From positions 190,744 through 254,743 of IMG/VR virus record IMGVR_UViG_3300007770_001284: a DNA stretch of 64,000 nucleotides; one strand, given 5' to 3'. Shown here in pieces: positions 1 through 16,098 of this stretch. Under the pieces are notes generated by a model. The model was not told the origin of the DNA, searched no databases, and was given only the letters and a program-made list of their open reading frames with translations. A program made the position numbers and the translations under genes. Each line of letters starts with the position of its first letter. Within the stretch, counting starts at the first letter, position 1.

Positions 1-26
1 TCGCGATTGGAGACGGGATATTGACG

Positions 27-798: not shown

Positions 799-970
799 GA
801 TAGCGCATGTGGTCGATACCCACTGCGGTATCGGTGATGACGGTCTATCTTATATTCTTGAACCTGGAATGAGCGGTCTTGTGGTGTCTATCACACCAGA
901 AATTACGACGTTGCTTATTCATGATAGACTTGTAGACGTTAGAGGATATAGCCTGGAAGCTTTATCATGA
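758..970 (+). CDS. Small hypothetical protein
   Basis: 70 aa ORF; ATGA overlap with the next gene; start uncertain. Confidence 0.5.
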   Translation: MKLRKEKSKVQEGKIAHVVDTHCGIGDDGLSYILEPGMSGLVVSITPEITTLLIHDRLVDVRGYSLEALS

Positions 971-1803
971 AACGTATTTCAAGAAAGTATTTAAGCAAAA
1001 TAATAAAAGAAGAGCTACATCTGCATAATCTCTTGGAATCGAATGTGAAGTCTGCTCGTGGGATGTCCAATCGTGTTACAAGAGCGATTATGGACCTTGT
1101 AAAGGATGGTGCCACAAATAGAGAGCGCTATGTTGTATTAACAATAGATGACTTAATCGATGACGAAGGATATCGGTCGCAAGCCACGACTGCGTATAAT
1201 CTGGATATTGACTTTATTCCCGGAAAAATAAACAGGCAGGCCGCTGATGAGGACTTCGAAGAATCAGACGCTTATTTAAGCGTTTCTCTTTTCGTAAACG
1301 AGGGTTCAGAACTGCATGTTTCGGGAGATGATATTAACAGGACGGGTGACCCTGGAATTCATTTAACGATTATAAAGCCTGTAGAGTTAACAGGTGCAGA
1401 TTTATCGACACTTCGAACAGAAATTTCAAATTCTGTTCGTCATGAAATGGAACATATGACACAAAACCTTCCTCGCTATTATCAAGGGATGGAAAAACCT
1501 GACGGTGGTCGGTATGCATATGACGAATTTGATATTTCTGGAGAGCCAGAATCTGATCGCGCGAAAGACTATTATCTCGATCCGAAGGAAGTGTCCGCTC
1601 ATATTATGGGTTATGCACAGAATACATCATCAATAAGCGATTTAGAAGAAGAAATTCGAGAGATGCTTGATAATTGGGCTAGCCCAGACTGGGAGAAGCG
1701 TAAAAATGTTTTAATAGCTCCTGGTGACGTAGACATAATAGCGAATGCTTGGCTAGATTGGGCAAAGAAGCATCTTCGAGGGAAACGATTTCAAGGGAAA
1801 TAA
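967..1803 (+). CDS. Zincin-like metallopeptidase with MKRISRKYLSKIIKEEL...LLES leader
   Basis: RHEMEH (HExxH) plus downstream YYLDPKEV Glu. Confidence 0.6.
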   Translation: MKRISRKYLSKIIKEELHLHNLLESNVKSARGMSNRVTRAIMDLVKDGATNRERYVVLTIDDLIDDEGYRSQATTAYNLDIDFIPGKINRQAADEDFEESDAYLSVSLFVNEGSELHVSGDDINRTGDPGIHLTIIKPVELTGADLSTLRTEISNSVRHEMEHMTQNLPRYYQGMEKPDGGRYAYDEFDISGEPESDRAKDYYLDPKEVSAHIMGYAQNTSSISDLEEEIREMLDNWASPDWEKRKNVLIAPGDVDIIANAWLDWAKKHLRGKRFQGK

Positions 1804-1848: not shown

Positions 1849-2772
1849 GTGTTTGAAATTTATATTCCATTTTATAACAGCCCGTTTTGTGCTGAGTATC
1901 AAGCGAAAACGCTGCGAGCATTTATGCGTGACGAAGATGTTACACTAATCTTTGTTGATAACAATATGGGGTATCACCCAGAGGCCTCTTTACGAATTAT
2001 TGAGATTTGCAAAGAGTATGATATAGAGCTTATTGTTAACAATGATCCGCTCTGTGCGAAATTTCAAGAGGGAATAGCGCAAGGTCATGTATCTACTTCC
2101 GATAAGCTGGGCCATACGCTTAATTTGATTTATGGCGTAGTCCAGCAAAGAAAACCTGATTATTTTGGGTTTCTCGATCAGGATTGTTTCGCGTTTAAGC
2201 CCGTTCAGCTTAAAGAATATCTAGATGAGCACGGCGCGTACGGAAAGGTGGTCCCAACACATCCGGACGAAAGTCATGTGACACGATCTGGCGAGCATGT
2301 GTGGAATTTACATGTGATGTGTAATTTTTTTAAGCGAGATTTTCTTTCTAACATGAACGTTAATTTTATGCCAGGGAGCTGGTGCGAGAGGCTTGGTTAT
2401 GGCTATGATGTCATACTAGACACGGGAGGAGTTAATTGGTGGACAATGTATAAAGACATGGATCGATCTCAGTATGTGCTACCAGAAGAACATTTTCTGT
2501 ATTATGATGATATTTCTCTCCTTGACCCCAATAATGATAGTCCTACTAAGACTCTTTATGAAGTGCTTGACAACAAGTGGGTGCATATGGTCCACGCCGC
2601 AAATTCTGGTGCAGCAGCAGACTATCTTAAGCCAAAAACTTCATATATGAAGGGATTCCTTGATTTTGCGTTATTGGATGCGGGTGCCGTTGGTGCCAGC
2701 CCTCGTCCAGAGTCTGACTTCATACCGTCGTACAGAGACCCGAACCGTCATTTTTCTTTTGAGGGTTCCTAA
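1849..2772 (+). CDS. GT-A fold glycosyltransferase-like protein
   Basis: N-terminal IYIPFYN, FVDNN and FLDQD (DxD) motifs. Confidence 0.55.
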   Translation: MFEIYIPFYNSPFCAEYQAKTLRAFMRDEDVTLIFVDNNMGYHPEASLRIIEICKEYDIELIVNNDPLCAKFQEGIAQGHVSTSDKLGHTLNLIYGVVQQRKPDYFGFLDQDCFAFKPVQLKEYLDEHGAYGKVVPTHPDESHVTRSGEHVWNLHVMCNFFKRDFLSNMNVNFMPGSWCERLGYGYDVILDTGGVNWWTMYKDMDRSQYVLPEEHFLYYDDISLLDPNNDSPTKTLYEVLDNKWVHMVHAANSGAAADYLKPKTSYMKGFLDFALLDAGAVGASPRPESDFIPSYRDPNRHFSFEGS

Positions 2773-2797
2773 ACCCACAAGATTAATTTACGTTAAG

Positions 2798-2826
2798 CTG
2801 AAAAAACCTCTCATACCCTCTATAAT
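2798..2826 (+). promoter_or_regulatory. Sigma70-like promoter CTGAAA-N17-TATAAT
   Basis: 17-nt spacing, followed by GGAGG and GTG 2846. Confidence 0.6.
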
Positions 2827-2845
2827 ACATCACATTGGAGGTTTT

Positions 2846-5800
2846 GTGCGTAAGACTAAACTGGTTCCCCCAAATAAGTTCATCTCCCTTCATTCTCATG
2901 ATGGGTTTTCTACTTTTGATGGGCTGGGCTATCCACAAGAGCACATCGACTTTGTCATTGAGAACGGCATGGACGGATGGTGTCTCACAAATCATGGTCA
3001 TATGAATTCATTTGGGCATGCTTTTCTTCATGCGGAAAAGGTCCAGAAGCGTGGGGGTACCTTTAGGTTTGTCCCTGGTTGTGAAATGTACGTTCATCCA
3101 GACCTTGACGCTTGGAAGCTGGATTACGAAATTCGCCAGGCTGCAAAGAAGGGTGATAAAGAAGCGTTGTTCTCATTACGAGAACAGCGGGAAGCAATTA
3201 CGACTCCGCTCACCGCCGTCACAGACCGCGACGATGAAATTATTGATATCGGTAAAGAAGAAGCTGGGCTTACCGTAGAAAATGAAGAGGAAACGAAGTC
3301 TGGAAAGTTTTACGATCCAGTGAAGCGTCGCCATCATTTGGTAGTTTTGCCCAAGACCAGCGAGGGTCTCCAACGTTTGTTCCACCTCGTTAGTAGGGGT
3401 TACAGAGAGGGCTTCTATAGGTTCCCGCGTGTTGACTATAGGATGCTAAGGGAAGCTGCTGAGGGAGGCCATCTAATGGTCTCAACAGCATGTATTGGTG
3501 GCCCAATCGCATACGAGGTCTTTAGGCACGCTCAACAGGTCGAGTTTGATGATTTAAAGCATACGCTGCTTGACGATCCGTCATTTCACCGTAACGTTAT
3601 GACGGGAGTTGGAAATGCGTATCAAGGGCTTGTTGATGCTGTCGGAATTGATGATGTACACCTCGAGCTTCAATTTAACAAACTTCCAGCTCAGCATCTA
3701 GTAAATCGGGCGATCATTGAATTTGCAAATAACCAGGGGCTTCAAGACAAGCTGGTTGTTACAACAGATTCTCATTATGCCCGACCAGAGCATTGGCGTG
3801 AACGTGAGCTTTATAAAAAGCTGGGATGGCTAAACTATCGTGAATTCGATCCATCGAAATTGCCCCAATCAAGAGATGATTTGAAGTGCGAGCTTTATCC
3901 TAAGAACGCTCCTCAGGTTTGGGATACGTATCTAGAGTCAACAGACGGAATGGATTTTTACAATGACCAAGTGGTAAAGGACGCAATCGAGCGTCCGCAT
4001 ACGCTTGTTCACGAGGCTATCCAAGACATCGTTCCCGATCGTACCATGAAGCTTCCTTCTTATGTTGTACCTGAAGGTATGACAGATGATAAGGCTTTGC
4101 TTGAGGCATGTAAGAAGGGTCTTGTTGAGCGAGGGTTGGCAAACGATCCAAAATATATCGAGCGAATAAAGCAAGAACTAAAAATCATCAAAGATAAGAA
4201 TTTTTCTCGATATTTCTTAACAATGGAAGCGATTATTAAGATTGCCAAGAAAGCCATGCTTGTCGGACCAGGACGCGGTTCGGCCGCGGGTAGTCTAGTT
4301 GCCTATGTTCTTAAGTTGACAGACGTTGACCCGTTCGAATACGATCTTATGTTTGGTCGTTTTCTAAACCCAAGTCGTGAGGGTGCCCCAGATATCGATA
4401 CCGATGTTGGTGACCGAGATTTGCTTCTCCAGCTAATGAAAGATGAGTGGGGAGATGAGAATATTATCCCCATCTCGAATTATAATACTTTCAAGCTTAA
4501 GTCCCTTGTGAAGGATATCTCTCGTTTTTATGGAATTCCATTTAACGAGGTAAATAAGGCTCTGTCAACTGTAGATGAAGATGTGAAGCGTGCAGTGTTT
4601 AAGCAGGGGACTGATAAAAACCTGTTCGTTCTACTTTACGAAGATGCTCTAGCTCATTCTAAGAAGTTTAGAGCGTTTATCGAGGCGCATCCAGAGGTCG
4701 CCGCCCCTATCCAGGTTTTGTTTAAACAGAACAAGGCTCTTGGTCGTCATGCAGGAGGTTGCATTGTCGCAGAAGATATAGCTGAAAGAATGCCGCTGAT
4801 CAAAGCTCGAGGTGAGCTCCAGACCCCCTGGGCTGAAGGCATGAACTATAAGCATCTTGAAACATTTGGCTGGATTAAGTTCGATCTTCTCGGTCTTGAA
4901 ACGCTACGGATCATTCAAAGAACGATTGAGCTGATTCTTCAAAGAAAAGAGGGTATTGAGGACCCAACATTCGAGCAGGTCTATGAGTGGTTCAATGCAA
5001 ATATGGATCCCAAGGTTCTTGATATGGATGACCAGCATGTCTATGAGCATGTTTATGCAGGTGGTCGTTGGGCCGGTATCTTTCAGCTAGCGGGAAGAGG
5101 TGCGCAAAACCTCTTTAAGAAAGCCAAGCCCAAGAGCATTATCGATATTGCTACGCTGACCTCTATCTATCGTCCAGGCCCACTCACTGCGAAGGTCGAT
5201 AGATTGTATATCAAGGCCAAGAATAATCCTGAGAAGATTGATTATGGGCATCCACTAATCAAAGAAGTACTAGAAGAAACATACGGCTTGATAGTCTTTC
5301 AAGAGCAGATCATGAAGCTTTGTTCTGTTGTAGCTGGTTTCCCAGAGGAAGAAACAGATACTGTTCGTCGCAGTATTATGAAGCGTAAAGCATCAGAGGC
5401 TGCAGAAAGTCTTGCTAAGGCTCGATCTATTAAGGAGCAGTTTGTTGCTGGCTCTGTTAAGAATGGAGTGGATAGTCAGCTTGCAGATGATTTGTACGAA
5501 AAGATTCTCTTCTTCGCAGGATACGGCTTCAATAAGTCTCATGCAGTTTGTTACGCTATTGACTCTTACTACTGCGCTTGGCTTTTAACATATTTCGAAG
5601 AGGAATGGTTATGCGCTTATCTTGAAGCGATGTCGGGTAATGATAAGAAGCGAGCCAAGGCTTTCGCTGAGGTTAAGACGCTAGGGTATCGAGTTGTGCC
5701 CCTTGATATTAATTACGCGACCAAGGATTGGACAATTCTTGAAGGTAAGAAATTTATGCCTTCTCTTTTGTCTTGTAAGGGTATTGGTGAATCTGCAATC

Positions 5801-6460
5801 GACGAACTTGTGACTAGTCGACCGTATAAGCATATTGACGACTTGTTGTGGGATGATATCGGAAAGTGGAGGCATTCCAAATTTAACAAGCGTGCTTTGG
5901 AGGCGTTAATCAATATTCAAGCATTCGAGTCTATGGATCTTATTGGTGACAACAAGACATTTGAAAGCTACAAACAAATGCATGAAGTGTTGATTGGTAA
6001 AAATTCTGAAATCAAGAAATGGACAAAGAAGGATCCAGAACGTGGTCGTAGAAACTTTAACGAGGCGTTGCTTGATACTCAGGGAGCTGGTGTCTGGACA
6101 CGACGAGAGCGAGTTGAGAATAACGTGCGACATTTCGGTTCATTTAATGCAGCTACACTAGTCCCAAGCGAGGTTCAAGAAAAGCTTGCTAAAATGGACA
6201 TTTTTCCCATTGATGAAATTAATGGTCATGACTTGTATTGGTTCCTCGTGTCAGATGTGAAGCCGAAGCTAACAAAGAACAAGCGGCCCTATCTACTGGT
6301 TACAGCAACTGCATTGTCTGGTCAGACCTATCGGATGTTTTGCTGGAGCTGGGATGGTGAAACCGAACTGCCGCTTTACAGTCTGTGCGTAGCTGAAGTG
6401 AAGAAAAATGATTTTGGATATCAAACTTCTATGAGAAAAATCAAAGTTCTTCAGTTATGA
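2846..6460 (+). CDS. dnaE: DNA polymerase III alpha subunit (C family)
   Basis: PHP motifs LHSHDGFS, TNHGH, TDSHY; GRGSAAGS; PDIDTD; KFDLLGL; YGFNKSHA. GTG start chosen from the GGAGG SD. Confidence 0.95.
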   Translation: MRKTKLVPPNKFISLHSHDGFSTFDGLGYPQEHIDFVIENGMDGWCLTNHGHMNSFGHAFLHAEKVQKRGGTFRFVPGCEMYVHPDLDAWKLDYEIRQAAKKGDKEALFSLREQREAITTPLTAVTDRDDEIIDIGKEEAGLTVENEEETKSGKFYDPVKRRHHLVVLPKTSEGLQRLFHLVSRGYREGFYRFPRVDYRMLREAAEGGHLMVSTACIGGPIAYEVFRHAQQVEFDDLKHTLLDDPSFHRNVMTGVGNAYQGLVDAVGIDDVHLELQFNKLPAQHLVNRAIIEFANNQGLQDKLVVTTDSHYARPEHWRERELYKKLGWLNYREFDPSKLPQSRDDLKCELYPKNAPQVWDTYLESTDGMDFYNDQVVKDAIERPHTLVHEAIQDIVPDRTMKLPSYVVPEGMTDDKALLEACKKGLVERGLANDPKYIERIKQELKIIKDKNFSRYFLTMEAIIKIAKKAMLVGPGRGSAAGSLVAYVLKLTDVDPFEYDLMFGRFLNPSREGAPDIDTDVGDRDLLLQLMKDEWGDENIIPISNYNTFKLKSLVKDISRFYGIPFNEVNKALSTVDEDVKRAVFKQGTDKNLFVLLYEDALAHSKKFRAFIEAHPEVAAPIQVLFKQNKALGRHAGGCIVAEDIAERMPLIKARGELQTPWAEGMNYKHLETFGWIKFDLLGLETLRIIQRTIELILQRKEGIEDPTFEQVYEWFNANMDPKVLDMDDQHVYEHVYAGGRWAGIFQLAGRGAQNLFKKAKPKSIIDIATLTSIYRPGPLTAKVDRLYIKAKNNPEKIDYGHPLIKEVLEETYGLIVFQEQIMKLCSVVAGFPEEETDTVRRSIMKRKASEAAESLAKARSIKEQFVAGSVKNGVDSQLADDLYEKILFFAGYGFNKSHAVCYAIDSYYCAWLLTYFEEEWLCAYLEAMSGNDKKRAKAFAEVKTLGYRVVPLDINYATKDWTILEGKKFMPSLLSCKGIGESAIDELVTSRPYKHIDDLLWDDIGKWRHSKFNKRALEALINIQAFESMDLIGDNKTFESYKQMHEVLIGKNSEIKKWTKKDPERGRRNFNEALLDTQGAGVWTRRERVENNVRHFGSFNAATLVPSEVQEKLAKMDIFPIDEINGHDLYWFLVSDVKPKLTKNKRPYLLVTATALSGQTYRMFCWSWDGETELPLYSLCVAEVKKNDFGYQTSMRKIKVLQL

Positions 6461-6505: not shown

Positions 6506-7537
6506 TTGTTTGCTGGAAAATTTGAAAACTTCACTGAATGTTATCTATCATTGATTGATGATGTCTATAATAATTCGACGTATTTATCTGCACCGAGAGG
6601 TCAGAAAATTAGGGAAAAACTTGGAGTATCTTTTACGATTGAGAATCCTCGTCACCGCATCCCCTACGTTGCGGGAAGAAAGTTTAGTGTGACGTATATG
6701 GTTGCCGAATTGTTGTGGTATCTTTCTGCAAATAATAAAACTGAATGGATCTCGAAGTACTCAGCTTTCTGGAAAGATATTAGTGATGATGGTGTGACAG
6801 CAAACTCTGCTTACGGTGCTCGGCTTTTTGCCCCTAATGAGAAGATTGCCAATGGTAGATTTACGCAATGGCAATATGTCGTAAACGAACTAAGAAGAGA
6901 TCCAGACTCCCGCAGGGCAGTAATGCACTTGAGAATGCCGGCAGACGGAATTGATGCGAAGTTAGATGTACCATGCACACTTACGCTGCAATTTTTTATT
7001 CGAGATAATGAGCTGCATATGATTGTTAACATGCGAAGCTCTGATTTGATTTTTGGAATTGCTTATGACATCCCTGCTTTTACATTTTTTCAAGAAATTT
7101 TAGCTGGACAATTGGGTGTCGAGCTTGGATCTTATACTCACATGAGCAATTCTCTTCACATTTACGAACGTCATTTTGAGATGGTCGAGACGATTTTAAG
7201 CGAAAAATGTCTAGCTAAAACGCGCAAGCTAACTGATATTCATGGTCCAATGCCAGCGATTGACGCTGCTGGGTGCAACCAGCAGGCATTAACATACTGG
7301 ATTAAGAAGCTAATGACATTTGAGAAAGCACTTTCTGATGCTACAACTCCTCGAGATGCCGTTCGTCTGTGGACTGCTTATTTTGCTTATGCTAATAATT
7401 CTGATCAAATATGGGCTGACTGGGCTCGGGTCTTAGCTGCACAAAGAGCAAGAAGACTTGGCGAGCCAGCAGAAGCAAACGAAATTCAAGCTATCACAGA
7501 TTTTAGTGGATATTCATTTAATATCAGGAGTCGTTAA
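6506..7537 (+). CDS. Thymidylate-synthase-family enzyme, probable dCMP hydroxymethylase/hydroxylase (T4 gp42-like)
   Basis: AELLWY, RRAV, DVPCTLTLQFFIR, MRSSDLIFGIAYD (Asp where ThyA has Asn), SLHIYERH. Confidence 0.8.
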   Translation: MFAGKFENFTECYLSLIDDVYNNSTYLSAPRGQKIREKLGVSFTIENPRHRIPYVAGRKFSVTYMVAELLWYLSANNKTEWISKYSAFWKDISDDGVTANSAYGARLFAPNEKIANGRFTQWQYVVNELRRDPDSRRAVMHLRMPADGIDAKLDVPCTLTLQFFIRDNELHMIVNMRSSDLIFGIAYDIPAFTFFQEILAGQLGVELGSYTHMSNSLHIYERHFEMVETILSEKCLAKTRKLTDIHGPMPAIDAAGCNQQALTYWIKKLMTFEKALSDATTPRDAVRLWTAYFAYANNSDQIWADWARVLAAQRARRLGEPAEANEIQAITDFSGYSFNIRSR

Positions 7538-8649
7538 TGACGTATCAGTATGATTATCTTATTGTCGGTGCTGGAATATTCGGCGCGACGTTTGCTAGAG
7601 AAATGACTGACGCGGGCAAAAAGTGCCTTGTCATTGATAAGCGGAAGCACATCGGTGGTAACGTGTATTCTGAAAAGCGAAATGGCATTGACGTACACGT
7701 ATATGGTGCCCATATTTTTCATACAAACAATGATCGAATTTGGGAGTACGTAAATCGATTTACGACATTCAACAATTACATCAATAAACCGAAGGTACGC
7801 TTTGGCGATCGCATTTTTTCGTTTCCCATTAATCTAATGACGCTTCATCAACTATGGGGTGTTATGGACCCCGCTGAAGCGAAAGCAAAGCTTAATGAAG
7901 TGAGGATTCATTGTGAGAATCCTGAAAATTTAGAAGACTGGATCCTTTCCCAGGTTGGGCGAGAAGTATACGAAACGTTCATCCGTGGTTATACAATGAA
8001 GCAATGGCAACGCGACCCGCGGGAACTCCCTTCGTCTATTATCAAGAGACTTCCCATTCGTCTTACATTTGATGAAAATTATTTTTTCGACAAGTACCAA
8101 GGAATTCCTGTTGACGGCTACACTGCAATGGTTGATAATATGCTGGAAGGAATTGAGGTGAAGACAGGTATTGATTATTTTGAAAACAGAGCCGTCTTTA
8201 TTCCTGCTGCAAAGAAGACTGTGTTCACTGGTAAAATTGATGAATTTTTTGGGTTTGTTCATGGTGAGCTTGAGTATCGCACTTTGCGGTTCGAGCATGA
8301 AGAGCTGATGGGTGACTTTCAAGGAAACGCTGTAGTGAACTATACTTCACCAGATGTCCCCTTTACTCGGATTGTAGAACACAAGCATTTTTTGCCTGAA
8401 TCGGCTGGAAAACTGGATAACACGATTATCACAAGAGAGTATTCCGCAGAGTATGACAGGAGCAAAACGCCATATTATCCTATCGGCGATGCGAAGAATA
8501 TAGCAATGTATAAGAAGTATTGCGAGATGGCTGAATCGGCAAAGGATGTCATTTTCGGGGGCCGGCTAGCAGAGTACAAATACTACGATATGCACCAAGT
8601 TATCGGTTCAGCACTTGTAAAAGCGAAAAGAGAACTTGAAAATAAATGA
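7537..8649 (+). CDS. glf: UDP-galactopyranose mutase
   Basis: IVGAGIFG, HIGGN, YGAHIFHT, YQGIP, PYYP, GRLAEYKYYDMHQ. Confidence 0.93.
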   Translation: MTYQYDYLIVGAGIFGATFAREMTDAGKKCLVIDKRKHIGGNVYSEKRNGIDVHVYGAHIFHTNNDRIWEYVNRFTTFNNYINKPKVRFGDRIFSFPINLMTLHQLWGVMDPAEAKAKLNEVRIHCENPENLEDWILSQVGREVYETFIRGYTMKQWQRDPRELPSSIIKRLPIRLTFDENYFFDKYQGIPVDGYTAMVDNMLEGIEVKTGIDYFENRAVFIPAAKKTVFTGKIDEFFGFVHGELEYRTLRFEHEELMGDFQGNAVVNYTSPDVPFTRIVEHKHFLPESAGKLDNTIITREYSAEYDRSKTPYYPIGDAKNIAMYKKYCEMAESAKDVIFGGRLAEYKYYDMHQVIGSALVKAKRELENK

Positions 8650-8687
8650 AGATTTGGCTATAATAAAATAGCAAATTTGGAGAATAG

Positions 8688-9740
8688 ATGAGAGTTTTGT
8701 ATAGTTTTTGGGGGTTTATTACTCCGCTTGAAAAAAATAGTATTGTAAATACACCTGATGGTGAGCGTGGGAACAGGGTGGACTTTGTTACCGAGCTTAT
8801 GAAGCGTGGCCACGTACCGATTCAACTTCAAAAGATGCGGGATATCGAGCGATATCCGGGTGTTGAATATGATGACGTAGGGTTTCCCGATGGTGATATT
8901 CTTTATGTCGAATGGCGTTGGCCCACTTGGAAGAACAGCGGCGATGACATTTTCGAGTCTGATTATACACGCCAGTGTAAGGTTCTTGACTATTATCATG
9001 ATAAAGGAATACCCATCATTATTCATGACGGTGATTTGAAGATGACCCCTGAAGAAGAGCTCCGCTGGCCGAATGCAGTTCTAGCTGATGCGTGCGTGAA
9101 CTCGCGACAGCAAACGAGGGAGCGTATTACCATTCCGTGGTGCAATTATATGAAACGCTATCTTGACCCTGTCGAGTATTCCTACAATTACACGTACGTT
9201 GGGAACAATTATGAGAGAGACGATCAATTTCAGAAGTATTACATAAGTTCAAGTCGCTCGCTTCGAGATCGAGGAATTCAAACGTCTATTTACGGTAATT
9301 GGTTACAAAAGTCTCCAGAGCGAAAAGACCCAAAAGAATTGCTGCAGGGAACTCCCTATGTTGCCTTTGGCCCACGCTTGGCGTACAAAGATATTTTCGG
9401 AGTCTTGAATTCTTCTATCACTGTTACCCATATCACAAAAGACGCGTATACGCCGTATGGTAATATTACGGGGAGATTTTTTGAAGCGATCAAAAGCAAC
9501 GTACCAGCGTTAGTCCCAATAGAATTTAAGCACGCTCTTCCTGTTGGACTAAATGGTCAACTTGTGGTGGAATCAACTCGTGATGTAATAAGCAAAGTAA
9601 ACTGGCTTTCATCGTTGAATGCCGAGCAAAGAAAAGCACTAGTAGACGAGCAGGAAGAGGCTCTTCGAACAGTGATTGATCCCAGACCAGAATACAGGGT
9701 AGATCTTCTTGAGCATATTTTGGGAGATTACCACGGATGA
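8688..9740 (+). CDS. DNA glycosyltransferase, T4 beta-glucosyltransferase-like (GT-B)
   Basis: 350 aa; colinear resemblance to T4 BGT as recalled: DGDLKM, YVGNNYER, SIYGN, NITGRFFEAIKS. Confidence 0.7.
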   Translation: MRVLYSFWGFITPLEKNSIVNTPDGERGNRVDFVTELMKRGHVPIQLQKMRDIERYPGVEYDDVGFPDGDILYVEWRWPTWKNSGDDIFESDYTRQCKVLDYYHDKGIPIIIHDGDLKMTPEEELRWPNAVLADACVNSRQQTRERITIPWCNYMKRYLDPVEYSYNYTYVGNNYERDDQFQKYYISSSRSLRDRGIQTSIYGNWLQKSPERKDPKELLQGTPYVAFGPRLAYKDIFGVLNSSITVTHITKDAYTPYGNITGRFFEAIKSNVPALVPIEFKHALPVGLNGQLVVESTRDVISKVNWLSSLNAEQRKALVDEQEEALRTVIDPRPEYRVDLLEHILGDYHG

Positions 9741-10291
9741 AGGTAGCATTCATTGGACCCGACATGACAGGAAAGTCAAATATTGCTGAAGAACTGTCTC
9801 GTCAGACAGACGTTCCTGTGTTCAAAAATTCCAGTGAATGGAAAACGCAACTTGATAGTCCAGATTATTTTCTTAATCTACTCAAATATGGTGGCCCATT
9901 TTTAATGGACTTTATTCGCCAAACAGGCGTATCAGTTATTTTAGACCGTTTTTATCCGTGTGAGTATGTCTACGCAGAAGCATTCGAGCGAGAGACAGAT
10001 ATGAATGCAATTTTGTGGATGGACGAGAATTTTTCTGAAGTAGGTGGGAAGTTTATCATATGTTTGCGGAAAGACTACTCTGGTCTGGTCGATGATCAAT
10101 ATCCTGACCAATTACCACCTGAAATGTTGAAAAAGTTAGACATTTATTATCGTAAGTTTGCTGAGCGTACAAGTTGTGATTATCTGATTTTAGAGACAGA
10201 TGACATGGACTTGAACAAGCAGGTAAAAGAGATTAAAATATTTTTAGGAATTAGAGAAATGGAAGCGGAGGATTTTTGTGTATACTCGTAA
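9737..10291 (+). CDS. dNMP/thymidylate-kinase-like P-loop kinase
   Basis: GPDMTGKS Walker A; ILDRFY. Confidence 0.8.
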   Translation: MKVAFIGPDMTGKSNIAEELSRQTDVPVFKNSSEWKTQLDSPDYFLNLLKYGGPFLMDFIRQTGVSVILDRFYPCEYVYAEAFERETDMNAILWMDENFSEVGGKFIICLRKDYSGLVDDQYPDQLPPEMLKKLDIYYRKFAERTSCDYLILETDDMDLNKQVKEIKIFLGIREMEAEDFCVYS

Positions 10292-11282
10292 AGCGTTAGT
10301 TACAGGGTGCTGTGGATTTATCGGCGGTCATCTTACGAAGATGTTAGTTGAGCAAGGGTGGGATGTAACTGGTGTCGACGATTTGTCAAATGGCGACCCC
10401 TCTGTATTAGACGGTATAGATATTAGGTGTATCCCACCTGCTCTTTTAGTGGCTTACGAAACACAGGCCGTCGATGCTAGTAAGACGCTGGTTATTACTG
10501 GTGATTTTGCTCATGAATATGTTCTTATGAAAATTGCTGAAGGTGAATTTGATGTAATTTTCCATCTGGCTGCCAATCCGCGTGTGGAGTTTTCTGTTAA
10601 GAATCCCGCATCGACTACCCATACAAACGTTCAAAAAACAATTGAATTAATGACAGCAGCTACCGGAAAAATTGATCGCTTTGTTTTTGCATCATCTTCG
10701 TCCAGCTATGGCAATACCGACCAATTTCCAACAAGAGAATCTTCTCCCACAAATCCAGAGTCACCTTACGGACTACAGAAGCTTGTCGTGGAACAATTTG
10801 GTGAATTGTACAACCGATTGTACAGTATGGATTTTGTTGCACTTCGGTTTTTCAATGTGTACGGCCCTGGCCAGGTGGGAGACTCTCCTTATTCAACTGC
10901 AATCGCTGCGTGGTGTACACGTCTTAAGAAAAATGAGCCCCTTCGAAGTGATGGAGACGGAGAACAACGGCGTGATATGGTGTATGTAAATGATGTTGCA
11001 AGTGCTATGGTGACAGCCGCTGATCACCCCGATTCGTTAGGTTACGCAATGTATAATGTTGCAACAGGCGTAGCTGTTACTAACAATGAAATTCTTAAGA
11101 CACTTAAAGAGTATTTTCCTGAGATGGTTATCAATCATGCTCCCGCTCGCCCAGGCGACGTAAAATTTACCTTGGGTTCTATAGATAAAATTAATGAGGA
11201 GCTCGGATGGATTCCCCGAAAGGAGTTTTGGGCTGGGCTCAGAAGCACGTTAAAGTGGTGGGGCTTATTGGACGATGAATAG
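10278..11282 (+). CDS. NAD-dependent nucleotide-sugar epimerase (extended SDR, GalE-like)
   Basis: VTGCCGFIGG, ASSSSSYG, YGLQK, LRFFNVYGP, GDGEQRRD. Confidence 0.88.
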   Translation: MYTRKALVTGCCGFIGGHLTKMLVEQGWDVTGVDDLSNGDPSVLDGIDIRCIPPALLVAYETQAVDASKTLVITGDFAHEYVLMKIAEGEFDVIFHLAANPRVEFSVKNPASTTHTNVQKTIELMTAATGKIDRFVFASSSSSYGNTDQFPTRESSPTNPESPYGLQKLVVEQFGELYNRLYSMDFVALRFFNVYGPGQVGDSPYSTAIAAWCTRLKKNEPLRSDGDGEQRRDMVYVNDVASAMVTAADHPDSLGYAMYNVATGVAVTNNEILKTLKEYFPEMVINHAPARPGDVKFTLGSIDKINEELGWIPRKEFWAGLRSTLKWWGLLDDE

Positions 11283-11706
11283 AAACGCATGGACCAGCAA
11301 ATCGGTGACAGTAGAAATGCCATGGGGTATAGAGACTCGCTGGAGCGCTGTCCCCACAATTACTGGAAAAAAGCTTGAAATTTATTCTGGTTTATGTACA
11401 AGCTTAAAATTTCATAAACAAAAGAATGAAGTTTTGTTTGTTGCATCTGGGGAAGTGACTGTTATTTTTGCTTGCGAGCGACATTTTGAAGACCCAATTC
11501 AGTATCCATCGTCAAAAGAAGTTTTAGGTCCAGGTGGTATGCTGAATGTCCAAGCAGGGTGCCCTTATCGGGTGTGTGCAAATAAAGATTCTGTAGTATA
11601 TGAAATTTCGGATGGAAGTAGTGAGAACAGTGTCCGGCTTGAGGACGAATATGGAAGAGCAATCGACACAATTGACGAGTTTCAGTTTATTTATCCAAAG
11701 GACTAA
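11275..11706 (+). CDS. Cupin-fold protein (sugar isomerase-like)
   Basis: MPWG, TSLKFHKQKNE; second-motif His appears replaced. Confidence 0.65.
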   Translation: MNRNAWTSKSVTVEMPWGIETRWSAVPTITGKKLEIYSGLCTSLKFHKQKNEVLFVASGEVTVIFACERHFEDPIQYPSSKEVLGPGGMLNVQAGCPYRVCANKDSVVYEISDGSSENSVRLEDEYGRAIDTIDEFQFIYPKD

Positions 11707-11729
11707 GTCCTAATTCTAAGGAGAAGAAA

Positions 11730-12569
11730 ATGAGCTCGATCGACCCAAATTCAGTAGATGTAGTGATTTACCACGCTGATTGCACTGACGGTTACGGGGC
11801 TGCGTATTCAGCATGGAAGCTGTTGGGAAAACGTGCCGAGTTTTATCCGTGTAAGCACGGTAATCCCCCCCCAAAAGTAAAGGGAAAGAACGTTGTTATT
11901 TTAGACTTCTCGTTTACGAATGCAGTTACAAAAAAGATGATAAAGTCTGCAAAAAACCTCATCGTGATTGACCACCATAAATCTGCAATGGTAGAATTAC
12001 ATGATATAACAAATACACATTTTGACATGACTAAGTCGGGTGCAATGCTGGCTTGGGAATTTTTTCATCCTGGAAAAGATGCTCCCAAGTTTATTCAATA
12101 TATTCAAGATCGTGATCTTTGGAAGTGGGAGCTCCCATACTCAAGGGAGTTCGCAGCAGCGTTTGATATGGTCCCCTTTGAGTTTGAGGAATTTGAAAAG
12201 TTTGAAGATGATTCGGTGTTTGATGACGCTGTTAAACGCGGTTCGTATATACTTGCTTATTCTAAGACAGTTGTAAAGAAGGTTTGCGAGAAAGCTGAGC
12301 CAAGAAAGTTTGAAGGGAAGGATGTTCTTGTTGTGAACGCTTCTCACTGGATGTCAGAAATCGGAGCAAGACTTTCACCAGATTGTGATTTTGCATTGAT
12401 TTGGTACTGGGATCATGAAGATAAGGTTACGAAGGTCAGCTTACGTGCATTTCACGATTCTGTTGACGTATCTGAAATTTCGAAAAAGTTTGGTGGCGGT
12501 GGTCACAAAAAAGCAGCAGGATTTACGCTTCCTAAGGAGACTCACATTGAAGAACTCTTTGACACTTGA
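11730..12569 (+). CDS. DHH/DHHA1 phosphoesterase (NrnB-like)
   Basis: YHADCTDG, LDFS, IDHHKS, DRDLW, GGGGHKKAAGF. Confidence 0.88.
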   Translation: MSSIDPNSVDVVIYHADCTDGYGAAYSAWKLLGKRAEFYPCKHGNPPPKVKGKNVVILDFSFTNAVTKKMIKSAKNLIVIDHHKSAMVELHDITNTHFDMTKSGAMLAWEFFHPGKDAPKFIQYIQDRDLWKWELPYSREFAAAFDMVPFEFEEFEKFEDDSVFDDAVKRGSYILAYSKTVVKKVCEKAEPRKFEGKDVLVVNASHWMSEIGARLSPDCDFALIWYWDHEDKVTKVSLRAFHDSVDVSEISKKFGGGGHKKAAGFTLPKETHIEELFDT

Positions 12570-13143
12570 TAGAACGCCAAAGTTTGATATTGTTTATTTA
12601 GATCCGCCATGGGACTACAAAGGCCAGCTACAACATAGTAAACCTGGAATGGGTGATACAGGTGGGGCTCGCAAGCATTATGGTACGCTCAAACTAAAAC
12701 AGCTTAAGCAGTTTCCAATGCAGGAGCTTCTTAACGAAGACTCGCTTGTCTTTATGTGGGTAACAAACCCACACCTCGATCAGGGCATTGAGCTGCTTAA
12801 GAGCTGGGGGCTGAAATATTCTACAGTCGCCTTTGTGTGGAACAAGATGCGGGTTAATCCTGGGTTTTATACCATGTCGCAGTGCGAGCTTTGCCTTGTT
12901 GGAAAAAATGGCAAGATTCCTCGACCTCGAGGTGCCAGAAACGTGCGACAATATCTAGAGCACCTCCGTGAAGAGCATAGCAAAAAGCCGGATGAAGTTA
13001 GGGCTCGCATTGAGCAGATGTTTCCAGACCAGACGAAGGTTGAACTGTTTGCTCGCCACCAGTTACCTGGATGGTCAGTTTGGGGAGATGAAGTCGAAAG
13101 CTGTGACAGTCTTAAAGGGTACTTGAATGAGCTCGGATGGTAG
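12559..13143 (+). CDS. MT-A70 family methyltransferase
   Basis: DPPW, FMWVTN, HSKKP, ELFAR; TTG start approximate. Confidence 0.88.
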   Translation: MTLDRTPKFDIVYLDPPWDYKGQLQHSKPGMGDTGGARKHYGTLKLKQLKQFPMQELLNEDSLVFMWVTNPHLDQGIELLKSWGLKYSTVAFVWNKMRVNPGFYTMSQCELCLVGKNGKIPRPRGARNVRQYLEHLREEHSKKPDEVRARIEQMFPDQTKVELFARHQLPGWSVWGDEVESCDSLKGYLNELGW

Positions 13144-13555
13144 ACCGCCATGGGATGAAATCTGGATGGGGTTTGCTCATTCAATAGCTCGTCGTTCCTA
13201 TGATCCGCGACATCAGGTTGGTGCTGTTGTTGTTACGAAAGAAAATACACAAGTGTTAGCTGTTGGGTATAACGGGAATTATACAGGCGGACCCAATGAG
13301 GCAGAGTCAGAAGTTCCGGGTGAGTCTGGAATGATTCATGCTGAAATTAACGCGCTGCTTAAATGTGATTACAATATTCTTGCGGAAAAGATAATGTACG
13401 TTACACTAAGTCCGTGTCGAATGTGCGCAAAAGCGATGGTAAATGGTGGGATTAGCGAAGTCATTTATAACGAGCAGTATCGTGATATTTCTGGGCTGGA
13501 TCTATTGAGGGCCGCTGGAGTAAAAGTAAGGCGCTATTCCTATAAGAAATACTAG
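13127..13555 (+). CDS. dCMP deaminase (ComEB-like)
   Basis: HAEINAL, SPCRMC, GYNG. Confidence 0.88.
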   Translation: MSSDGRPPWDEIWMGFAHSIARRSYDPRHQVGAVVVTKENTQVLAVGYNGNYTGGPNEAESEVPGESGMIHAEINALLKCDYNILAEKIMYVTLSPCRMCAKAMVNGGISEVIYNEQYRDISGLDLLRAAGVKVRRYSYKKY

Positions 13556-13572: not shown

Positions 13573-13603
13573 GTCTAGTGCTTTGTTTGCCGGAGTTGTT
13601 CTT

Positions 13604-14950: not shown

Positions 14951-15383
14951 TGTTGATTCGAGATATATTTTAGAGGTGCTGAAATTTGAATATAATCAAA
15001 GATTATCAGAGACCTTACGAGAAGCAGAAATTTTTGATGCTCAAGGAAATATTATCATCAAACCTGATTTGAAAGTACGTCATAAGAAGTCTGGTTATGA
15101 ATATACAGTCGATCGAGTCGAGGGTGATGTACCCGGCAGCGTTAAGATTGTTTTACGAGAACCCGATGAGCCAAGGTTTGAACCCCCTCCAGAGGGTGAA
15201 GAAGTTTTAGGCGGACCCCAGGATGGAGTATTGGCTGAAGATGATTTAACGATTCAGGGTAATGGTGTTGAAGTTGTGGTTCCAGGTGTCGCACCGGTGG
15301 AAGTACCGGAGGAAGAAGCCGAAGATGAAGAATATTTCGTGGTCGATGAAAAAGACTTTGAAGAAGAATACGAGGTAAAGTAA
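14943..15383 (+). CDS. Acidic hypothetical protein
   Basis: RLSETLREAE motif; overlaps the previous stop. Confidence 0.6.
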   Translation: MSSVDSRYILEVLKFEYNQRLSETLREAEIFDAQGNIIIKPDLKVRHKKSGYEYTVDRVEGDVPGSVKIVLREPDEPRFEPPPEGEEVLGGPQDGVLAEDDLTIQGNGVEVVVPGVAPVEVPEEEAEDEEYFVVDEKDFEEEYEVK

Positions 15384-15384
15384 A

Positions 15385-16098
15385 ATGTCATTTGACGATA
15401 AAGAGATTAAGAAAGTTATTCGAGACACGCTTGGGTTAAATGAAGTAAAAGAGCGACTAGACGAAGCCTATGTGCTTCAAGCAAAGAAATACGATCTTAA
15501 GACAGATTTATTGAGCAGGAAAACAATCGATACACATCAGAAATTGTTACAAGGCTATGTTGAGACTGCAAATAATATTTCTGCTAAATTAGATTCTGTT
15601 GATAGAACAGAAGCGAATGCAAATGATTCTGCTTTTCGATCTTTGAAAATTGAGGAATCGTATAATTTAAATGCATCATTTCTTCATGCTTATTATTTCG
15701 ATAATATTGCTGACCCCAACTCAAAGATAACAATGGATTCGCTAGCTTATATGCGACTAGCCAGGGATTTTGGGACATTTGATGACTGGCAACGTGACTT
15801 TGTTGCATGTGCCTTGTCAGCGAGGAACGGTTGGGCAATGACTGTTTATAATTGCTTTTTAGATCGTTTCATGAACGTCGTTGTTGATCTACATAATATC
15901 AATATTCCACTAAATTGCTATCCAGTGATCGTTCTTGATATGTGGGAGCATGCATATTTCAGGGATTATCTCAGTGATAAGCAGAAGTACGTATTTGCTA
16001 TGATGAAGGAACTAAACTGGGATGTTATAGAAGACCGTGTTAGCCGTGCCGATAAGCTTGCAAGGTTGTTTAACAAACCTTCGGAGACGAAGCAATGA
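15385..16098 (+). CDS. Fe/Mn superoxide dismutase family protein with N-terminal leader
   Basis: THQK, FLHAYY, LDMWEHAY (all four metal-ligand positions), LNW. Confidence 0.8.
   Translation: MSFDDKEIKKVIRDTLGLNEVKERLDEAYVLQAKKYDLKTDLLSRKTIDTHQKLLQGYVETANNISAKLDSVDRTEANANDSAFRSLKIEESYNLNASFLHAYYFDNIADPNSKITMDSLAYMRLARDFGTFDDWQRDFVACALSARNGWAMTVYNCFLDRFMNVVVDLHNINIPLNCYPVIVLDMWEHAYFRDYLSDKQKYVFAMMKELNWDVIEDRVSRADKLARLFNKPSETKQ

What the first reader, a model, noticed from the sequence alone, without database searches (positions are those of the whole stretch)
6506..7537. The ThyA-like enzyme carries dCMP-type signatures
Seen: PCT (ThyA has PCH) and GIAYD (ThyA has GLPFN). Known: Asn177 of ThyA versus Asp179 of T4 gp42 sets dUMP versus dCMP specificity. 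Inference: the product is hm-dCMP, hydroxy-dCMP or methyl-dCMP. With the co-operonic dCMP deaminase, a route to hm-dUMP cannot be excluded. An automated thyA label would hide this.
Basis: partly seen in the sequence, partly recalled or inferred. Interest (0 to 1): 0.6.

Follow-up and report, generated by a model that had tools for sequence, protein, structure and literature searches.

The report
Marine jumbo phage hydroxymethyl-dCMP synthase
The gene labelled "thymidylate synthase" in this uncultured marine jumbo phage most likely makes 5-hydroxymethyl-dCMP, the first step of a gene cluster that seems to put a sugar, probably galactofuranose, on the cytosines of the phage DNA.

Summary
ORF 6506-7537 (+, 343 aa) is a thymidylate-synthase-fold protein with D154-V-P-C157-T158 and G184-I-A-Y-D188. 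At E. coli ThyA positions L143/H147/D169/N177 it reads D/T/D/D. T4 gp42 and MilA read the same. ThyA reads L/H/D/N, dUMP hydroxymethylases D/N/D/N, 5-hydroxy-dCMP synthases E/T/N/D and the Xp12 dCMP methylase N/P/D/D. All 120 closest homologues share the signature.

Its nearest solved structure is MilA (CMP hydroxymethylase), matched over the full length including MilA's C-terminal helical domain. MilA's two ribose-selecting residues (Lys133', Ala176) are Arg136/Ser178 here, the deoxy-type residues. It scores far below NCBIfam's ThyA cut-offs.

The gene sits in a tightly packed same-strand array:
- UDP-galactopyranose mutase
- a GT-B glycosyltransferase whose best structural match is T4 beta-glucosyltransferase
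- a P-loop nucleotide kinase
- a GalE-like 4-epimerase
- a cupin
- a dCMP deaminase

An NTP pyrophosphohydrolase lies upstream. Much of this array recurs in 68 related viral contigs.

Best reading: a dCMP 5-hydroxymethylase feeding glycosylated hmC DNA. The enzyme is a new member of a known kind. The predicted galactofuranosyl-hmC would be a new variant. No activity was measured, so methyl-dCMP, hydroxy-dCMP and a deaminase branch to hm-dU are unlikely but not excluded.

The parts
6506..7537 (+). Thymidylate-synthase-fold enzyme, predicted dCMP 5-hydroxymethylase (5hmdCMP synthase). Catalytic Cys157. D154 = ThyA L143, T158 = H147, D180 = D169, D188 = N177, R136/S178 = deoxyribose selectors. 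Residues ~233-343 form a MilA-like helical C-terminal domain.
6965..6979 (+). DVPCT motif: Asp154 at the L143 position, nucleophile Cys157, Thr158 at the H147 position
7055..7069 (+). GIAYD motif: Asp188 at the N177 position, which sets cytosine versus uracil specificity
7537..8649 (+). UDP-galactopyranose mutase (Glf). Its start overlaps the stop of the TS-like gene.
   Evidence: PF03275 1.3e-76. NCBIfam TIGR00031 scores 367 bits against a 304-bit equivalog cut-off. 45% identical to the Glf of Rhizobium phage RL38J1 and of Lactobacillus phage ATCCB.
8688..9740 (+). GT-B glycosyltransferase, candidate DNA (hmC) glycosyltransferase
   Evidence: No Pfam or PHROG hit for the window protein itself; PF13524 in many homologues. 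AF2 model pLDDT 92. Foldseek top hit is T4 beta-glucosyltransferase 1c3j, E 1e-9. VIA-align ranks T4 BGT first at Z 23.4 with 305 residues aligned; GT4 enzymes score Z 20-22. Weak similarity to the VPE25 BGT-like protein, E 4e-5. Atlas features point to PF09198/PF13524 clusters.
9737..10291 (+). P-loop nucleotide kinase (thymidylate-kinase/dNK-like), candidate 5hmdCMP kinase
   Evidence: phrog_761 thymidylate kinase 5e-6. AAA_28 weak hit. Atlas neighbours carry PF02223/PF01712. Found beside the TS-like gene in 57 of 68 relatives.
10278..11282 (+). NAD-dependent UDP-hexose 4-epimerase (GalE/WbpP-like)
   Evidence: PF01370 1e-52. Best NCBIfam hit is GalE at 4.5e-44, below the equivalog cut-off. 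Best solved relatives are UDP-Glc and UDP-GlcNAc 4-epimerases. Present in 64 of 68 relatives.
11275..11706 (+). Small cupin of unknown role, possibly in sugar-nucleotide tailoring
   Evidence: Cupin_1 weak hit. phrog_7851 1.5e-11. No PDB sequence hit. Present in 29 of 68 relatives.
11730..12569 (+). DHH/DHHA1 phosphoesterase; its role in the pathway is unknown
   Evidence: Present in 35 of 68 relatives.
13127..13555 (+). dCMP/dCTP-type zinc deaminase
   Evidence: PF00383 1.6e-21. phrog_174 2e-49. Present in 61 of 68 relatives.
1..24 (+). Last codons of a 167-aa all-alpha NTP pyrophosphohydrolase (G000:C1:190264-190767), candidate dCTPase. Most of the gene lies just upstream of the window.
   Evidence: phrog_12184 2.3e-18. 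PF08761 and PF01503 weak hits. Found upstream of the TS-like gene in 31 of 68 relatives.
2660..6460 (+). DnaE-type DNA polymerase III alpha (PHP + pol3 alpha), the replicase that would have to accept the modified dCTP. The true start is probably downstream of 2660.
   Evidence: Adjacent to the TS-like gene in 64 of 68 relatives.

Best explanation
The product of 6506-7537 is a deoxycytidylate 5-hydroxymethylase. Cys157 attacks C6 of dCMP. C5 takes the methylene of 5,10-methylene-tetrahydrofolate. The exocyclic methylene is then hydrated rather than reduced, giving 5-hydroxymethyl-dCMP and tetrahydrofolate.

The neighbouring P-loop kinase, with host NDP kinase, would raise this to 5hmdCTP for the phage DnaE-type polymerase. 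The upstream NTP pyrophosphohydrolase and the dCMP deaminase would drain the dCTP/dCMP pool; the deaminase would also supply dUMP for dTMP synthesis.

After replication, the GT-B transferase would glycosylate hmC in DNA. Its donor would be made by the GalE-like epimerase (UDP-Glc to UDP-Galp) and Glf (UDP-Galp to UDP-Galf).

Shown here: the active-site signature, the fold, family-wide conservation, and the gene neighbourhood with its conservation. Inferred: every enzymatic activity, the identity of the sugar, and that the DNA is actually modified.
For: - Four-site signature: D/T/D/D at ThyA 143/147/169/177, identical to T4-like gp42. The same alignment recovers the published signatures of the controls: RB69 gp48 and RL38J1 TS2 E/T/N/D, dUMP hydroxymethylases D/N/D/N, ThyA L/H/D/N, Xp12 N/P/D/D. 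The diagnostic rules come from PMC13326640.
- Positions 147 and 177 best separate cytosine-modified from unmodified metavirome contigs.
- Conservation: the signature is invariant in 120 of 120 homologues.
- Structure: the closest solved protein is MilA, phmmer 6e-43 against 3e-23 for the best ThyA. Foldseek gives TMq 0.75 over about 345 columns including the C-terminal helical domain, whereas ThyA hits cover about 245 columns.
- Sugar specificity: MilA's ribose selectors Lys133'/Ala176 are Arg136/Ser178 here, as in deoxy-specific enzymes.
- Not a ThyA: far below the NCBIfam ThyA equivalog cut-offs, and outside the ThyA clade at 100/99 support.
- Neighbours: Glf, a BGT-like GT-B transferase, a kinase, an epimerase, a deaminase and an upstream NTP-PPase. 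These recur in 68 related viral loci.
- ThyX: close relatives (60-71% identity) and the Tara relative also encode ThyX, so in them the TS-like enzyme is not needed for dTMP.
- DHFR: none found in the genome. That fits a reaction that returns THF rather than DHF (MilA paper).
- Cultured analogues: the nearest cultured phages with the same signature have BGT-like genes adjacent (VPE25), or BGT plus Glf adjacent (Lactobacillus phage ATCCB).
Against: - No activity or DNA chemistry was measured; every step is inferred.
- The phylogeny does not join the family to gp42. The non-ThyA clades form a polytomy, and phage G gp319 (D-type) groups with dUMP hydroxymethylases, so specificity has switched within this radiation.
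- The L143 rule is a correlation, and Xp12's methylase has Asn there rather than a bulky hydrophobic residue.
- The held genome (75% complete) has no ThyA or ThyX of its own. That leaves room for a scheme in which the deaminase acts on the modified nucleotide.
- The glycosyltransferase's best match to T4 BGT is only about 1.5 Z units above ordinary GT4 enzymes, so its DNA substrate is inferred from context.
- The NTP-PPase assignment rests on modest scores.
Confidence: 0.65

Rival explanations
1. It is a dCMP 5-methyltransferase of the Xp12 type. 5mC would replace C, and the linked deaminase would convert part of the 5mdCTP pool to dTTP, so no separate thymidylate synthase is needed.
For: Asp at the N177 position. 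The deaminase is linked to the TS-like gene in 61 of 68 loci, the pattern reported for 5mC phages. No ThyA or ThyX in the held genome.
Against: The L143/H147 positions read D/T as in hydroxymethylases, not N/P as in Xp12. The architecture is MilA-like with an open C-terminus rather than a ThyA-like closing tail. No DHFR was found, whereas Xp12 has one adjacent. The glycosyltransferase and UDP-sugar genes need a hydroxyl acceptor. Close relatives carry ThyX.
Confidence: 0.1
2. It is a flavin-dependent 5-hydroxy-dCMP synthase of the RB69 gp48 / RL38J1 type, and the sugar is attached through an ether to 5-hydroxycytosine.
For: N177D, an acidic residue at the L143 position and Thr at the H147 position are shared with 5hodCMP synthases. 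RL38J1, which makes glycosylated 5hoC, also encodes Glf and a thymidylate-kinase-like kinase.
Against: The diagnostic D169N change is absent: D180 is invariant in the family, while RB69 gp48 and RL38J1 TS2 show Asn in the same alignment. The family does not group with the 5hodCMP clade. The paper tested only D169N enzymes, so whether Asn is strictly necessary remains unproven.
Confidence: 0.07
3. 5hmdCMP or 5hmdCTP is made as proposed, but the linked deaminase converts some or all of it to the 5-hydroxymethyl-dU nucleotide. The DNA would then carry (glycosylated) hmU instead of, or alongside, hmC.
For: The deaminase is tightly linked. Some phage deaminases next to N177D homologues deaminate 5hmdCTP in vitro and yield 5hmdU in vivo. 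The held genome has no thymidylate synthase of its own.
Against: Only 7 of 90 tested deaminases did this, and their partner enzymes made 5mdCMP. Known hmU phages use Asn-type dUMP hydroxymethylases. ThyX and TK in relatives fit the ordinary role of the deaminase in supplying dUMP.
Confidence: 0.08
4. It is an ordinary, divergent thymidylate synthase making dTMP from dUMP.
For: Pfam and PHROG label it thymidylate synthase. It is the only PF00303 gene in the held genome. The dCMP deaminase would supply dUMP.
Against: N177, H147 and L143 are all replaced. It scores 102 bits against a 327-bit NCBIfam cut-off. It lies outside the ThyA clade at 100/99 support. It lacks the ThyA C-terminal segment. 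Relatives also encode ThyX. No DHFR was found.
Confidence: 0.03
5. It is a CMP (ribonucleotide) hydroxymethylase like MilA or BcmA, serving a nucleoside-type metabolite or an RNA modification.
For: MilA is the closest solved structure, with the same domain architecture.
Against: Both ribose-selecting residues are the deoxy type, Arg136 and Ser178. No MilB-like partner was noticed among the neighbouring genes scanned. The gene sits between the replicative polymerase and a BGT-like transferase.
Confidence: 0.02

Closest known systems
T4 gp42 deoxycytidylate 5-hydroxymethyltransferase (with gp1 kinase, gp56 dCTPase, cd deaminase, alpha/beta-glucosyltransferases)
   Same: Identical four-site active-site signature D/T/D/D, with the catalytic Cys, Glu, Arg-Ser and His-x-Tyr residues conserved. 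The same logic of companion genes: kinase, NTP-PPase, deaminase and a GT-B transferase.
   Different: Only about 27% identity. 343 aa against 246 aa, with an extra helical C-terminal domain. The two do not form a clade in the tree. The replicase is DnaE-type rather than family B. The sugar genes point to galactose or galactofuranose rather than glucose.
MilA, CMP 5-hydroxymethylase of mildiomycin biosynthesis (PDB 5jnh, 5b6d)
   Same: Best sequence and structure match, about 30% identity, the same length, and the same TS core plus C-terminal helical domain. Asp at both the L143 and N177 positions.
   Different: MilA's ribose selectors Lys133' and Ala176 are Arg and Ser here. The context is a phage replication and DNA-modification cluster, not an antibiotic gene cluster.
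5-hydroxy-dCMP synthases (RB69 gp48, DLP3 gp80, RL38J1) and their glycosylation clusters (Lee et al. 2026, PMC13326640)
   Same: A TS homologue with N177D and an acidic residue at the L143 position. In RL38J1 the companions include UDP-galactopyranose mutase, a thymidylate-kinase-like kinase and DNA glycosyltransferases.
   Different: Asp169 is kept here, whereas those enzymes have D169N. It forms a different clade.
TS homologues of Enterococcus phage VPE25, Lactobacillus phage ATCCB and Bacillus phage G (gp319)
   Same: The closest cultured-phage homologues at 36-38% identity. Same D/T/D/D signature. BGT-like genes adjacent; in ATCCB the triad TS-like, BGT, Glf is adjacent.
   Different: Different clades. 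VPE25 and ATCCB have shorter proteins (281 and 269 aa). They come from unrelated phage lineages infecting Firmicutes. As far as I found, the DNA chemistry of ATCCB and phage G has not been reported.
Xp12 dCMP methyltransferase with its linked deaminase
   Same: Asp at the N177 position, and linkage to a dCMP-deaminase-family gene.
   Different: Xp12 reads N/P at positions 143/147, has ThyA-like length, has DHFR adjacent, and has no glycosyltransferase.

Membership tests
Canonical thymidylate synthase ThyA (EC 2.1.1.45) | Score above the curated equivalog cut-off | tested here: not met
   Best NCBIfam ThyA model scores 102 bits against a 327-bit cut-off; TIGR03284 scores 78 against 108.
Canonical thymidylate synthase ThyA (EC 2.1.1.45) | Asn177, His147 and Leu143 in the active site | tested here: not met
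   Asp188, Thr158 and Asp154.
Canonical thymidylate synthase ThyA (EC 2.1.1.45) | TS fold with the Cys nucleophile and phosphate-binding arginines | tested here: met
   PF00303 1.6e-35. C157, R136/R137, R177 and S178 are invariant. Fold matches.
dCMP 5-hydroxymethylase (T4 gp42 type, EC 2.1.2.8) | Asp at the N177 position (cytosine specificity) | tested here: met
   D188, invariant in the family.
dCMP 5-hydroxymethylase (T4 gp42 type, EC 2.1.2.8) | Acidic residue at the L143 position, with Asp169 retained | tested here: met
   D154 and D180. The rule is from PMC13326640.
dCMP 5-hydroxymethylase (T4 gp42 type, EC 2.1.2.8) | Deoxyribose-type selectors (Arg and Ser where MilA has Lys133' and Ala176) | tested here: met
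   R136 and S178.
dCMP 5-hydroxymethylase (T4 gp42 type, EC 2.1.2.8) | Forms a clade with characterised dCMP hydroxymethylases | tested here: inconclusive
   The family is its own clade (98/98) in an unresolved polytomy with the gp42, VPE25/ATCCB, 5hodCMP and phage G/dUMP-hydroxymethylase clades.
dCMP 5-hydroxymethylase (T4 gp42 type, EC 2.1.2.8) | Converts dCMP plus CH2-THF to 5hmdCMP plus THF | not testable with these tools
   Needs an enzyme assay or in vivo LC-MS.
5-hydroxy-dCMP synthase (RB69 gp48 type) | Asn at the D169 position | tested here: not met
   D180 here. RB69 gp48 and RL38J1 TS2 show Asn in the same alignment.
CMP hydroxymethylase (MilA/BcmA) | TS core plus C-terminal five-helix domain | tested here: met
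   Foldseek TMq 0.75 / TMt 0.81 over about 345 columns. Helices 221-337 in the model.
CMP hydroxymethylase (MilA/BcmA) | Lys133' and Ala176 ribose selectors | tested here: not met
   Arg136 and Ser178.
dUMP hydroxymethylase (SPO1 gp29, ViI/Kuttervirus, M6-like) | Asn at the N177 position (and Asn at the H147 position in the references used) | tested here: not met
   Asp188 and Thr158.
dCMP methyltransferase (Xp12 type) | Xp12-like residues at positions 143/147, and a linked DHFR | tested here: not met
   D/T here against N/P in Xp12. No PF00186 hit in the held genome. Only one reference methylase was available.
T4 beta-glucosyltransferase family (for ORF 8688-9740) | GT-B fold most similar to BGT | tested here: met
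   Z 23.4, rmsd 3.6 Å, 305 of 351 residues aligned, rank 1; GT4 enzymes are within about 1.5 Z. Foldseek rank 1 is 1c3j.
T4 beta-glucosyltransferase family (for ORF 8688-9740) | Match to Pfam PF09198 | tested here: not met
   No Pfam hit at E <= 0.01. Relatives carry PF13524 instead.
T4 beta-glucosyltransferase family (for ORF 8688-9740) | Transfers a sugar to hmC in duplex DNA | not testable with these tools
   Inferred from gene context only.

The most novel reading that the evidence does not exclude
A widespread lineage of uncultured marine jumbo phages replaces cytosine with 5-hydroxymethylcytosine carrying galactofuranose, a furanose sugar not so far reported on hmC. It would be made by a MilA-architecture, deoxy-specific hydroxymethylase together with phage-encoded GalE, Glf and a BGT-like transferase. 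Sister clades that lack Glf or swap the transferase would make other glycoforms. In the strain studied here, which has no ThyA or ThyX, the linked deaminase might also supply the thymidine-position nucleotide from the modified cytosine pool.
Probability: 0.3. Interest if true: 0.7.

Novelty: new member of a known kind. Interest (0 to 1): 0.5.

Why it matters
If correct, this large, environment-wide group of marine jumbo phages has hypermodified DNA that standard annotation hides under "thymidylate synthase". The family has more than 1000 proteins in the word search. The window phage itself appears in seawater metagenomes from 11 studies.

That would affect several things:
- how these phages evade restriction and CRISPR defences
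- how well their DNA is recovered by enzymatic library methods
- which type IV restriction systems their unknown hosts may carry

It would also offer a new deoxy-specific relative of MilA, and possibly a DNA galactofuranosyltransferase, as tools for hmC labelling.

Tried and rejected
- Megablast of the cluster against cultured phages found nothing. The DnaE polymerase is at most 30% identical to any cultured phage, so no cultured relative or host could be named.
- A scan of one genome per prokaryote species found no relative. It used only two narrow peptide patterns, so this is weak evidence that the family is virus-only.
- Phylogeny was expected to settle the substrate but gave a polytomy with many long branches. 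I rely on the site signatures instead. MilA itself could not be put in the tree because no referenced sequence was available.
- Own-genome searches for ThyX, MazG, trimeric dUTPase, DHFR and PF13524 were negative. The record is only about 75% complete, so absence is provisional.
- PDB sequence searches for the cupin, the kinase and the NTP-PPase gave nothing usable.
- BLASTP of the transferase against the ATCCB BGT-like protein was not significant.
- A 2025 paper on a new lineage of large aquatic phages does not mention these genes.
- The sequencing runs found hold contigs only, with no raw long reads, so basecalling signs of modified C could not be examined.
- I did not run the large representative protein search or complex prediction. 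The word search and family scans already answered the question.
Full report
**Where the window lies.** The window is the last 64 kb (190,744-254,743) of a 254,743-bp IMG/VR virus record estimated to be 75% complete. Nearly all genes are on the + strand. The region holds a DnaE-type polymerase, GroEL, a superoxide-dismutase-like protein and a tRNA nucleotidyltransferase. Megablast finds no cultured phage, and the polymerase is at most 30% identical to any. The same DNA occurs in marine and seawater metagenomes from 11 studies. This is an uncultured marine jumbo phage.

**Observation.** ORF 6506-7537 (+, TTG start, 343 aa) matches Pfam Thymidylat_synt at 1.6e-35 and four PHROG "thymidylate synthase" families. 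Window 6965-6979 encodes DVPCT and 7055-7069 encodes GIAYD. Alignment with reference enzymes places Cys157 on the ThyA nucleophile Cys146, Thr158 on His147 and Asp188 on Asn177. It is not noise: all 120 closest homologues (54-100% identity) carry the same residues, and they are invariant in a 24-sequence alignment.

**Published diagnostics.**
- Lee et al. 2026 (PMC13326640) summarise and extend the rules. N177D gives dCMP preference. A bulky L143 goes with methylation, and Asp or Glu there goes with non-methyl products. D169N marks the newly found flavin-dependent 5-hydroxy-dCMP synthases; all nine D169N enzymes tested made 5hoC.
- Yang et al. 2021 (PMC8670742) found that positions 147 and 177 are the two top positions separating TS homologues on cytosine-modified metavirome contigs from those on unmodified ones.
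- Zhao et al. 2016 (PMC5175136) showed that MilA prefers CMP because of Lys133' and Ala176. The A176S/K133R double mutant reverses the preference to dCMP.

**Applying the diagnostics.** One MAFFT alignment gave the residues at ThyA positions 143/147/169/177:

| Enzyme | 143/147/169/177 |
|---|---|
| Window protein and 15 family members | D/T/D/D |
| T4-like gp42 | D/T/D/D |
| Phage G gp319, VPE25, Agathobaculum phage | D/T/D/D |
| RB69 gp48 and RL38J1 TS2 (5hodCMP synthases) | E/T/N/D |
| SPO1 gp29 and Kuttervirus (dUMP hydroxymethylases) | D/N/D/N |
| T4-like td and RL38J1 ThyA | L/H/D/N |
| Xp12 (dCMP methylase) | N/P/D/D |

The controls come out as published, so the alignment can be trusted at these columns. 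MilA also reads Asp, Thr, Asp, Asp in the phmmer alignment. The window enzyme therefore has the hydroxymethyl-dCMP signature. It lacks the hydroxy-dCMP marker and differs from the one available methylase. At MilA's ribose-selecting positions it has Arg136 and Ser178, the deoxy type.

**Fold.** The closest solved protein by sequence is MilA (5.6e-43). The best ThyA scores 2.6e-23 and T4 gp42 6.9e-17. An AlphaFold2 model (pLDDT 89, pTM 0.90) matches MilA at TMq 0.75 / TMt 0.81 over about 345 columns. ThyA structures cover only about 245 columns at TMq about 0.55. The protein therefore shares MilA's extra C-terminal helical domain. According to the MilA paper, that domain sits away from the active site and replaces the ThyA C-terminal segment that closes over folate. 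This fits hydration rather than hydride transfer, but that is an inference. NCBIfam's ThyA equivalog models score far below their cut-offs (102 against 327 bits).

**Phylogeny.** An IQ-TREE analysis of 32 sequences separates canonical ThyA at 100/99 support and recovers the window's family as its own clade at 98/98. The non-ThyA clades form a polytomy: gp42 with RsoM2USA, VPE25 with ATCCB and the Agathobaculum phage, the 5hodCMP synthases, phage G gp319 with the dUMP hydroxymethylases, and this family. Many branches are long. Phage G gp319 is an Asp-type enzyme yet groups with Asn-type dUMP hydroxymethylases, so specificity has switched inside this radiation. The tree excludes ThyA membership but does not decide the substrate. 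The site signature carries that weight.

**Neighbourhood.** From 6506 to 13555 the genes lie on one strand with overlapping or nearly abutting ends.
- **Glf (7537-8649).** It scores above the NCBIfam equivalog cut-off, 367 against 304 bits.
- **350-aa protein (8688-9740).** It has no family hit, but homologues carry PF13524. Its model (pLDDT 92) is a GT-B glycosyltransferase. The top match is T4 beta-glucosyltransferase (Foldseek E 1e-9; VIA-align Z 23.4 with 305 residues aligned). Ordinary GT4 enzymes follow at Z 20-22.
- **184-aa P-loop protein.** It resembles thymidylate or deoxynucleoside kinases.
- **GalE/WbpP-like 4-epimerase**.
- **Small cupin, DHH phosphoesterase and MT-A70 methyltransferase**.
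- **dCMP-deaminase-family enzyme**.
- **NTP pyrophosphohydrolase.** This 167-aa all-alpha enzyme lies just upstream of the window and ends at window base 24 (phrog_12184 2.3e-18). It is the kind of enzyme that serves as dCTPase in hmC phages; that comparison rests on my own knowledge of T4 gp56.

**Conservation of the neighbourhood.** In 68 IMG/VR loci that encode a family member (42-100% identity), tblastn within ±10 kb found the following:

| Neighbour | Loci out of 68 |
|---|---|
| Polymerase | 64 |
| Epimerase | 64 |
| Deaminase | 61 |
| Kinase | 57 |
| GT-B transferase | 43 |
| DHH phosphoesterase | 35 |
| NTP-PPase | 31 |
| Cupin | 29 |
| Glf | 21 (mostly the closest clade) |
| Alternative 440-aa protein | 12 |

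- ThyX lies 7-9 kb upstream in 10 of the closer relatives (58-71% identity) and in the Tara relative. In those phages dTMP synthesis has its own enzyme.
- The window's own genome has no ThyX, no second PF00303 gene, no DHFR, no MazG and no trimeric dUTPase in the 255 kb held.

**Cultured analogues.**
- The closest cultured homologues are the Enterococcus VPE25 group, Bacillus phage G and Lactobacillus phage ATCCB, at 36-38% identity.
- VPE25 has a dUTPase-family gene and a beta-glucosyltransferase next to its TS homologue.
- Phage G has a canonical ThyA elsewhere, and an alpha-glucosyltransferase and a deaminase nearby.
- ATCCB has TS-like, beta-glucosyltransferase and Glf in a row, and its Glf is 45% identical to the window's.
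- Glf also occurs in the Pootjesviridae. Lee et al. propose that it supplies UDP-galactofuranose for glycosylated 5-hydroxycytosine there.

**Mechanism proposed.**
1. dCMP is hydroxymethylated at C5 by the TS-like enzyme.
2. The phage kinase and host NDP kinase phosphorylate the product to 5hmdCTP, and the DnaE-type polymerase incorporates it.
3. The NTP-PPase and the deaminase lower competing dCTP and dCMP, and the deaminase supplies dUMP.
4. The GT-B enzyme transfers a hexose to hmC in DNA from a UDP-sugar made by the epimerase and, in this clade, Glf.

The anatomy and its conservation are shown. Every activity, and the furanose identity of the sugar, are inferred.

**Rivals.**
- **Xp12-like 5-methyl-dCMP scheme.** A deaminase would make dTTP from 5mdCTP. 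This would explain the missing thymidylate synthase. It conflicts with the D/T signature, the absence of DHFR, the glycosyltransferase and sugar genes, and ThyX in relatives.
- **5-hydroxy-dCMP synthase.** It lacks the D169N marker.
- **Deaminase branch from 5hm-dC nucleotides to 5hm-dU.** This cannot be excluded, because 7 of 90 such deaminases produced 5hmdU in vivo. Nothing here specifically supports it.
- **Plain ThyA, or a CMP hydroxymethylase.** Both are contradicted by tested features (see Membership tests).

**Novelty.** Asp177-type TS homologues linked to deaminases and transferases are already known to mark cytosine-modified viral contigs. The enzyme is therefore a new, uncharacterised clade of a known kind. 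Its notable features are the MilA architecture combined with deoxy-type selectors, and its wide spread in marine jumbo phages. In the paper library, only Lee et al. 2026 links Glf to phage DNA modification, and that is on 5-hydroxycytosine. Galactofuranosyl-hmC would be a new variant, but it is only predicted.

Noticed in passing
window 12415-13143 (+); the true start is probably near 12560: An MT-A70-family (N6-adenine-type) DNA methyltransferase lies between the DHH gene and the deaminase (PF05063 4.6e-26, phrog_359 1.6e-63). It recurs in 17 of 68 relatives. The phage may therefore carry a second, adenine modification.
   Followed up: partly
G000:C1:190264-190767 (ends at window base 24): A 167-aa all-alpha NTP pyrophosphohydrolase (phrog_12184 2.3e-18) lies just upstream of the window. 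It is conserved 5-10 kb upstream of the TS-like gene in 31 of 68 relatives and is a candidate dCTPase.
   Followed up: partly
L023-L029, L034, L037 and L038 (ThyX 7-9 kb upstream of the TS-like gene); L011/L012 548-1282: Close relatives encode ThyX upstream of the polymerase. The window's own genome and the L030-L032 clade do not, and no other thymidylate synthase was found in the 255 kb held. How this strain obtains dTMP is open: from the host, from the missing 25% of the genome, or through the deaminase.
   Followed up: partly
window 1849-2772 (+) and 967-1803 (+): Two ORFs upstream of the polymerase occur only in this phage and its nearest relative (3-4 of 68 loci). The 307-aa one has a sub-threshold Glycos_transf_2 hit (E 0.003) and might be a second, strain-specific glycosyltransferase.
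   Followed up: partly
L011/L012 8678-10000 (440 aa) and 8151-8681 (176 aa): In relatives that lack the GT-B gene, an unannotated 440-aa protein sits beside the kinase homologue just upstream of the TS-like gene (12 of 68 loci). It may be an alternative transferase giving a different glycoform.
   Followed up: no
L091 3995-7050 (Lactobacillus phage ATCCB, MK504445.1): This cultured phage has TS-like (D/T/D/D type clade), beta-glucosyltransferase and UDP-galactopyranose mutase genes in a row. It is a tractable model for testing galactofuranosylated hmC.
   Followed up: partly
L007 3989-5035 (Bacillus phage G gp319): gp319 has the cytosine-type signature (Asp at the 177 position) yet groups with Asn-type dUMP hydroxymethylases at 98/97 support. 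This suggests a recent switch of specificity within that clade.
   Followed up: no
window 15385-16098 (+), 27833-29416 (+), 40553-42190 (+): Auxiliary genes: an Fe/Mn superoxide-dismutase-like protein conserved next to the cluster in 61 of 68 relatives, a GroEL chaperonin (phrog_5725 1e-132), and a tRNA nucleotidyltransferase.
   Followed up: no
window 13583-14950, 14928-15383, 16095-16748, 17992-19176 and many larger ORFs (e.g. 42187-45611, 48398-50521): Most large ORFs have no Pfam or PHROG match at all. This lineage is very poorly covered by current family libraries.
   Followed up: no
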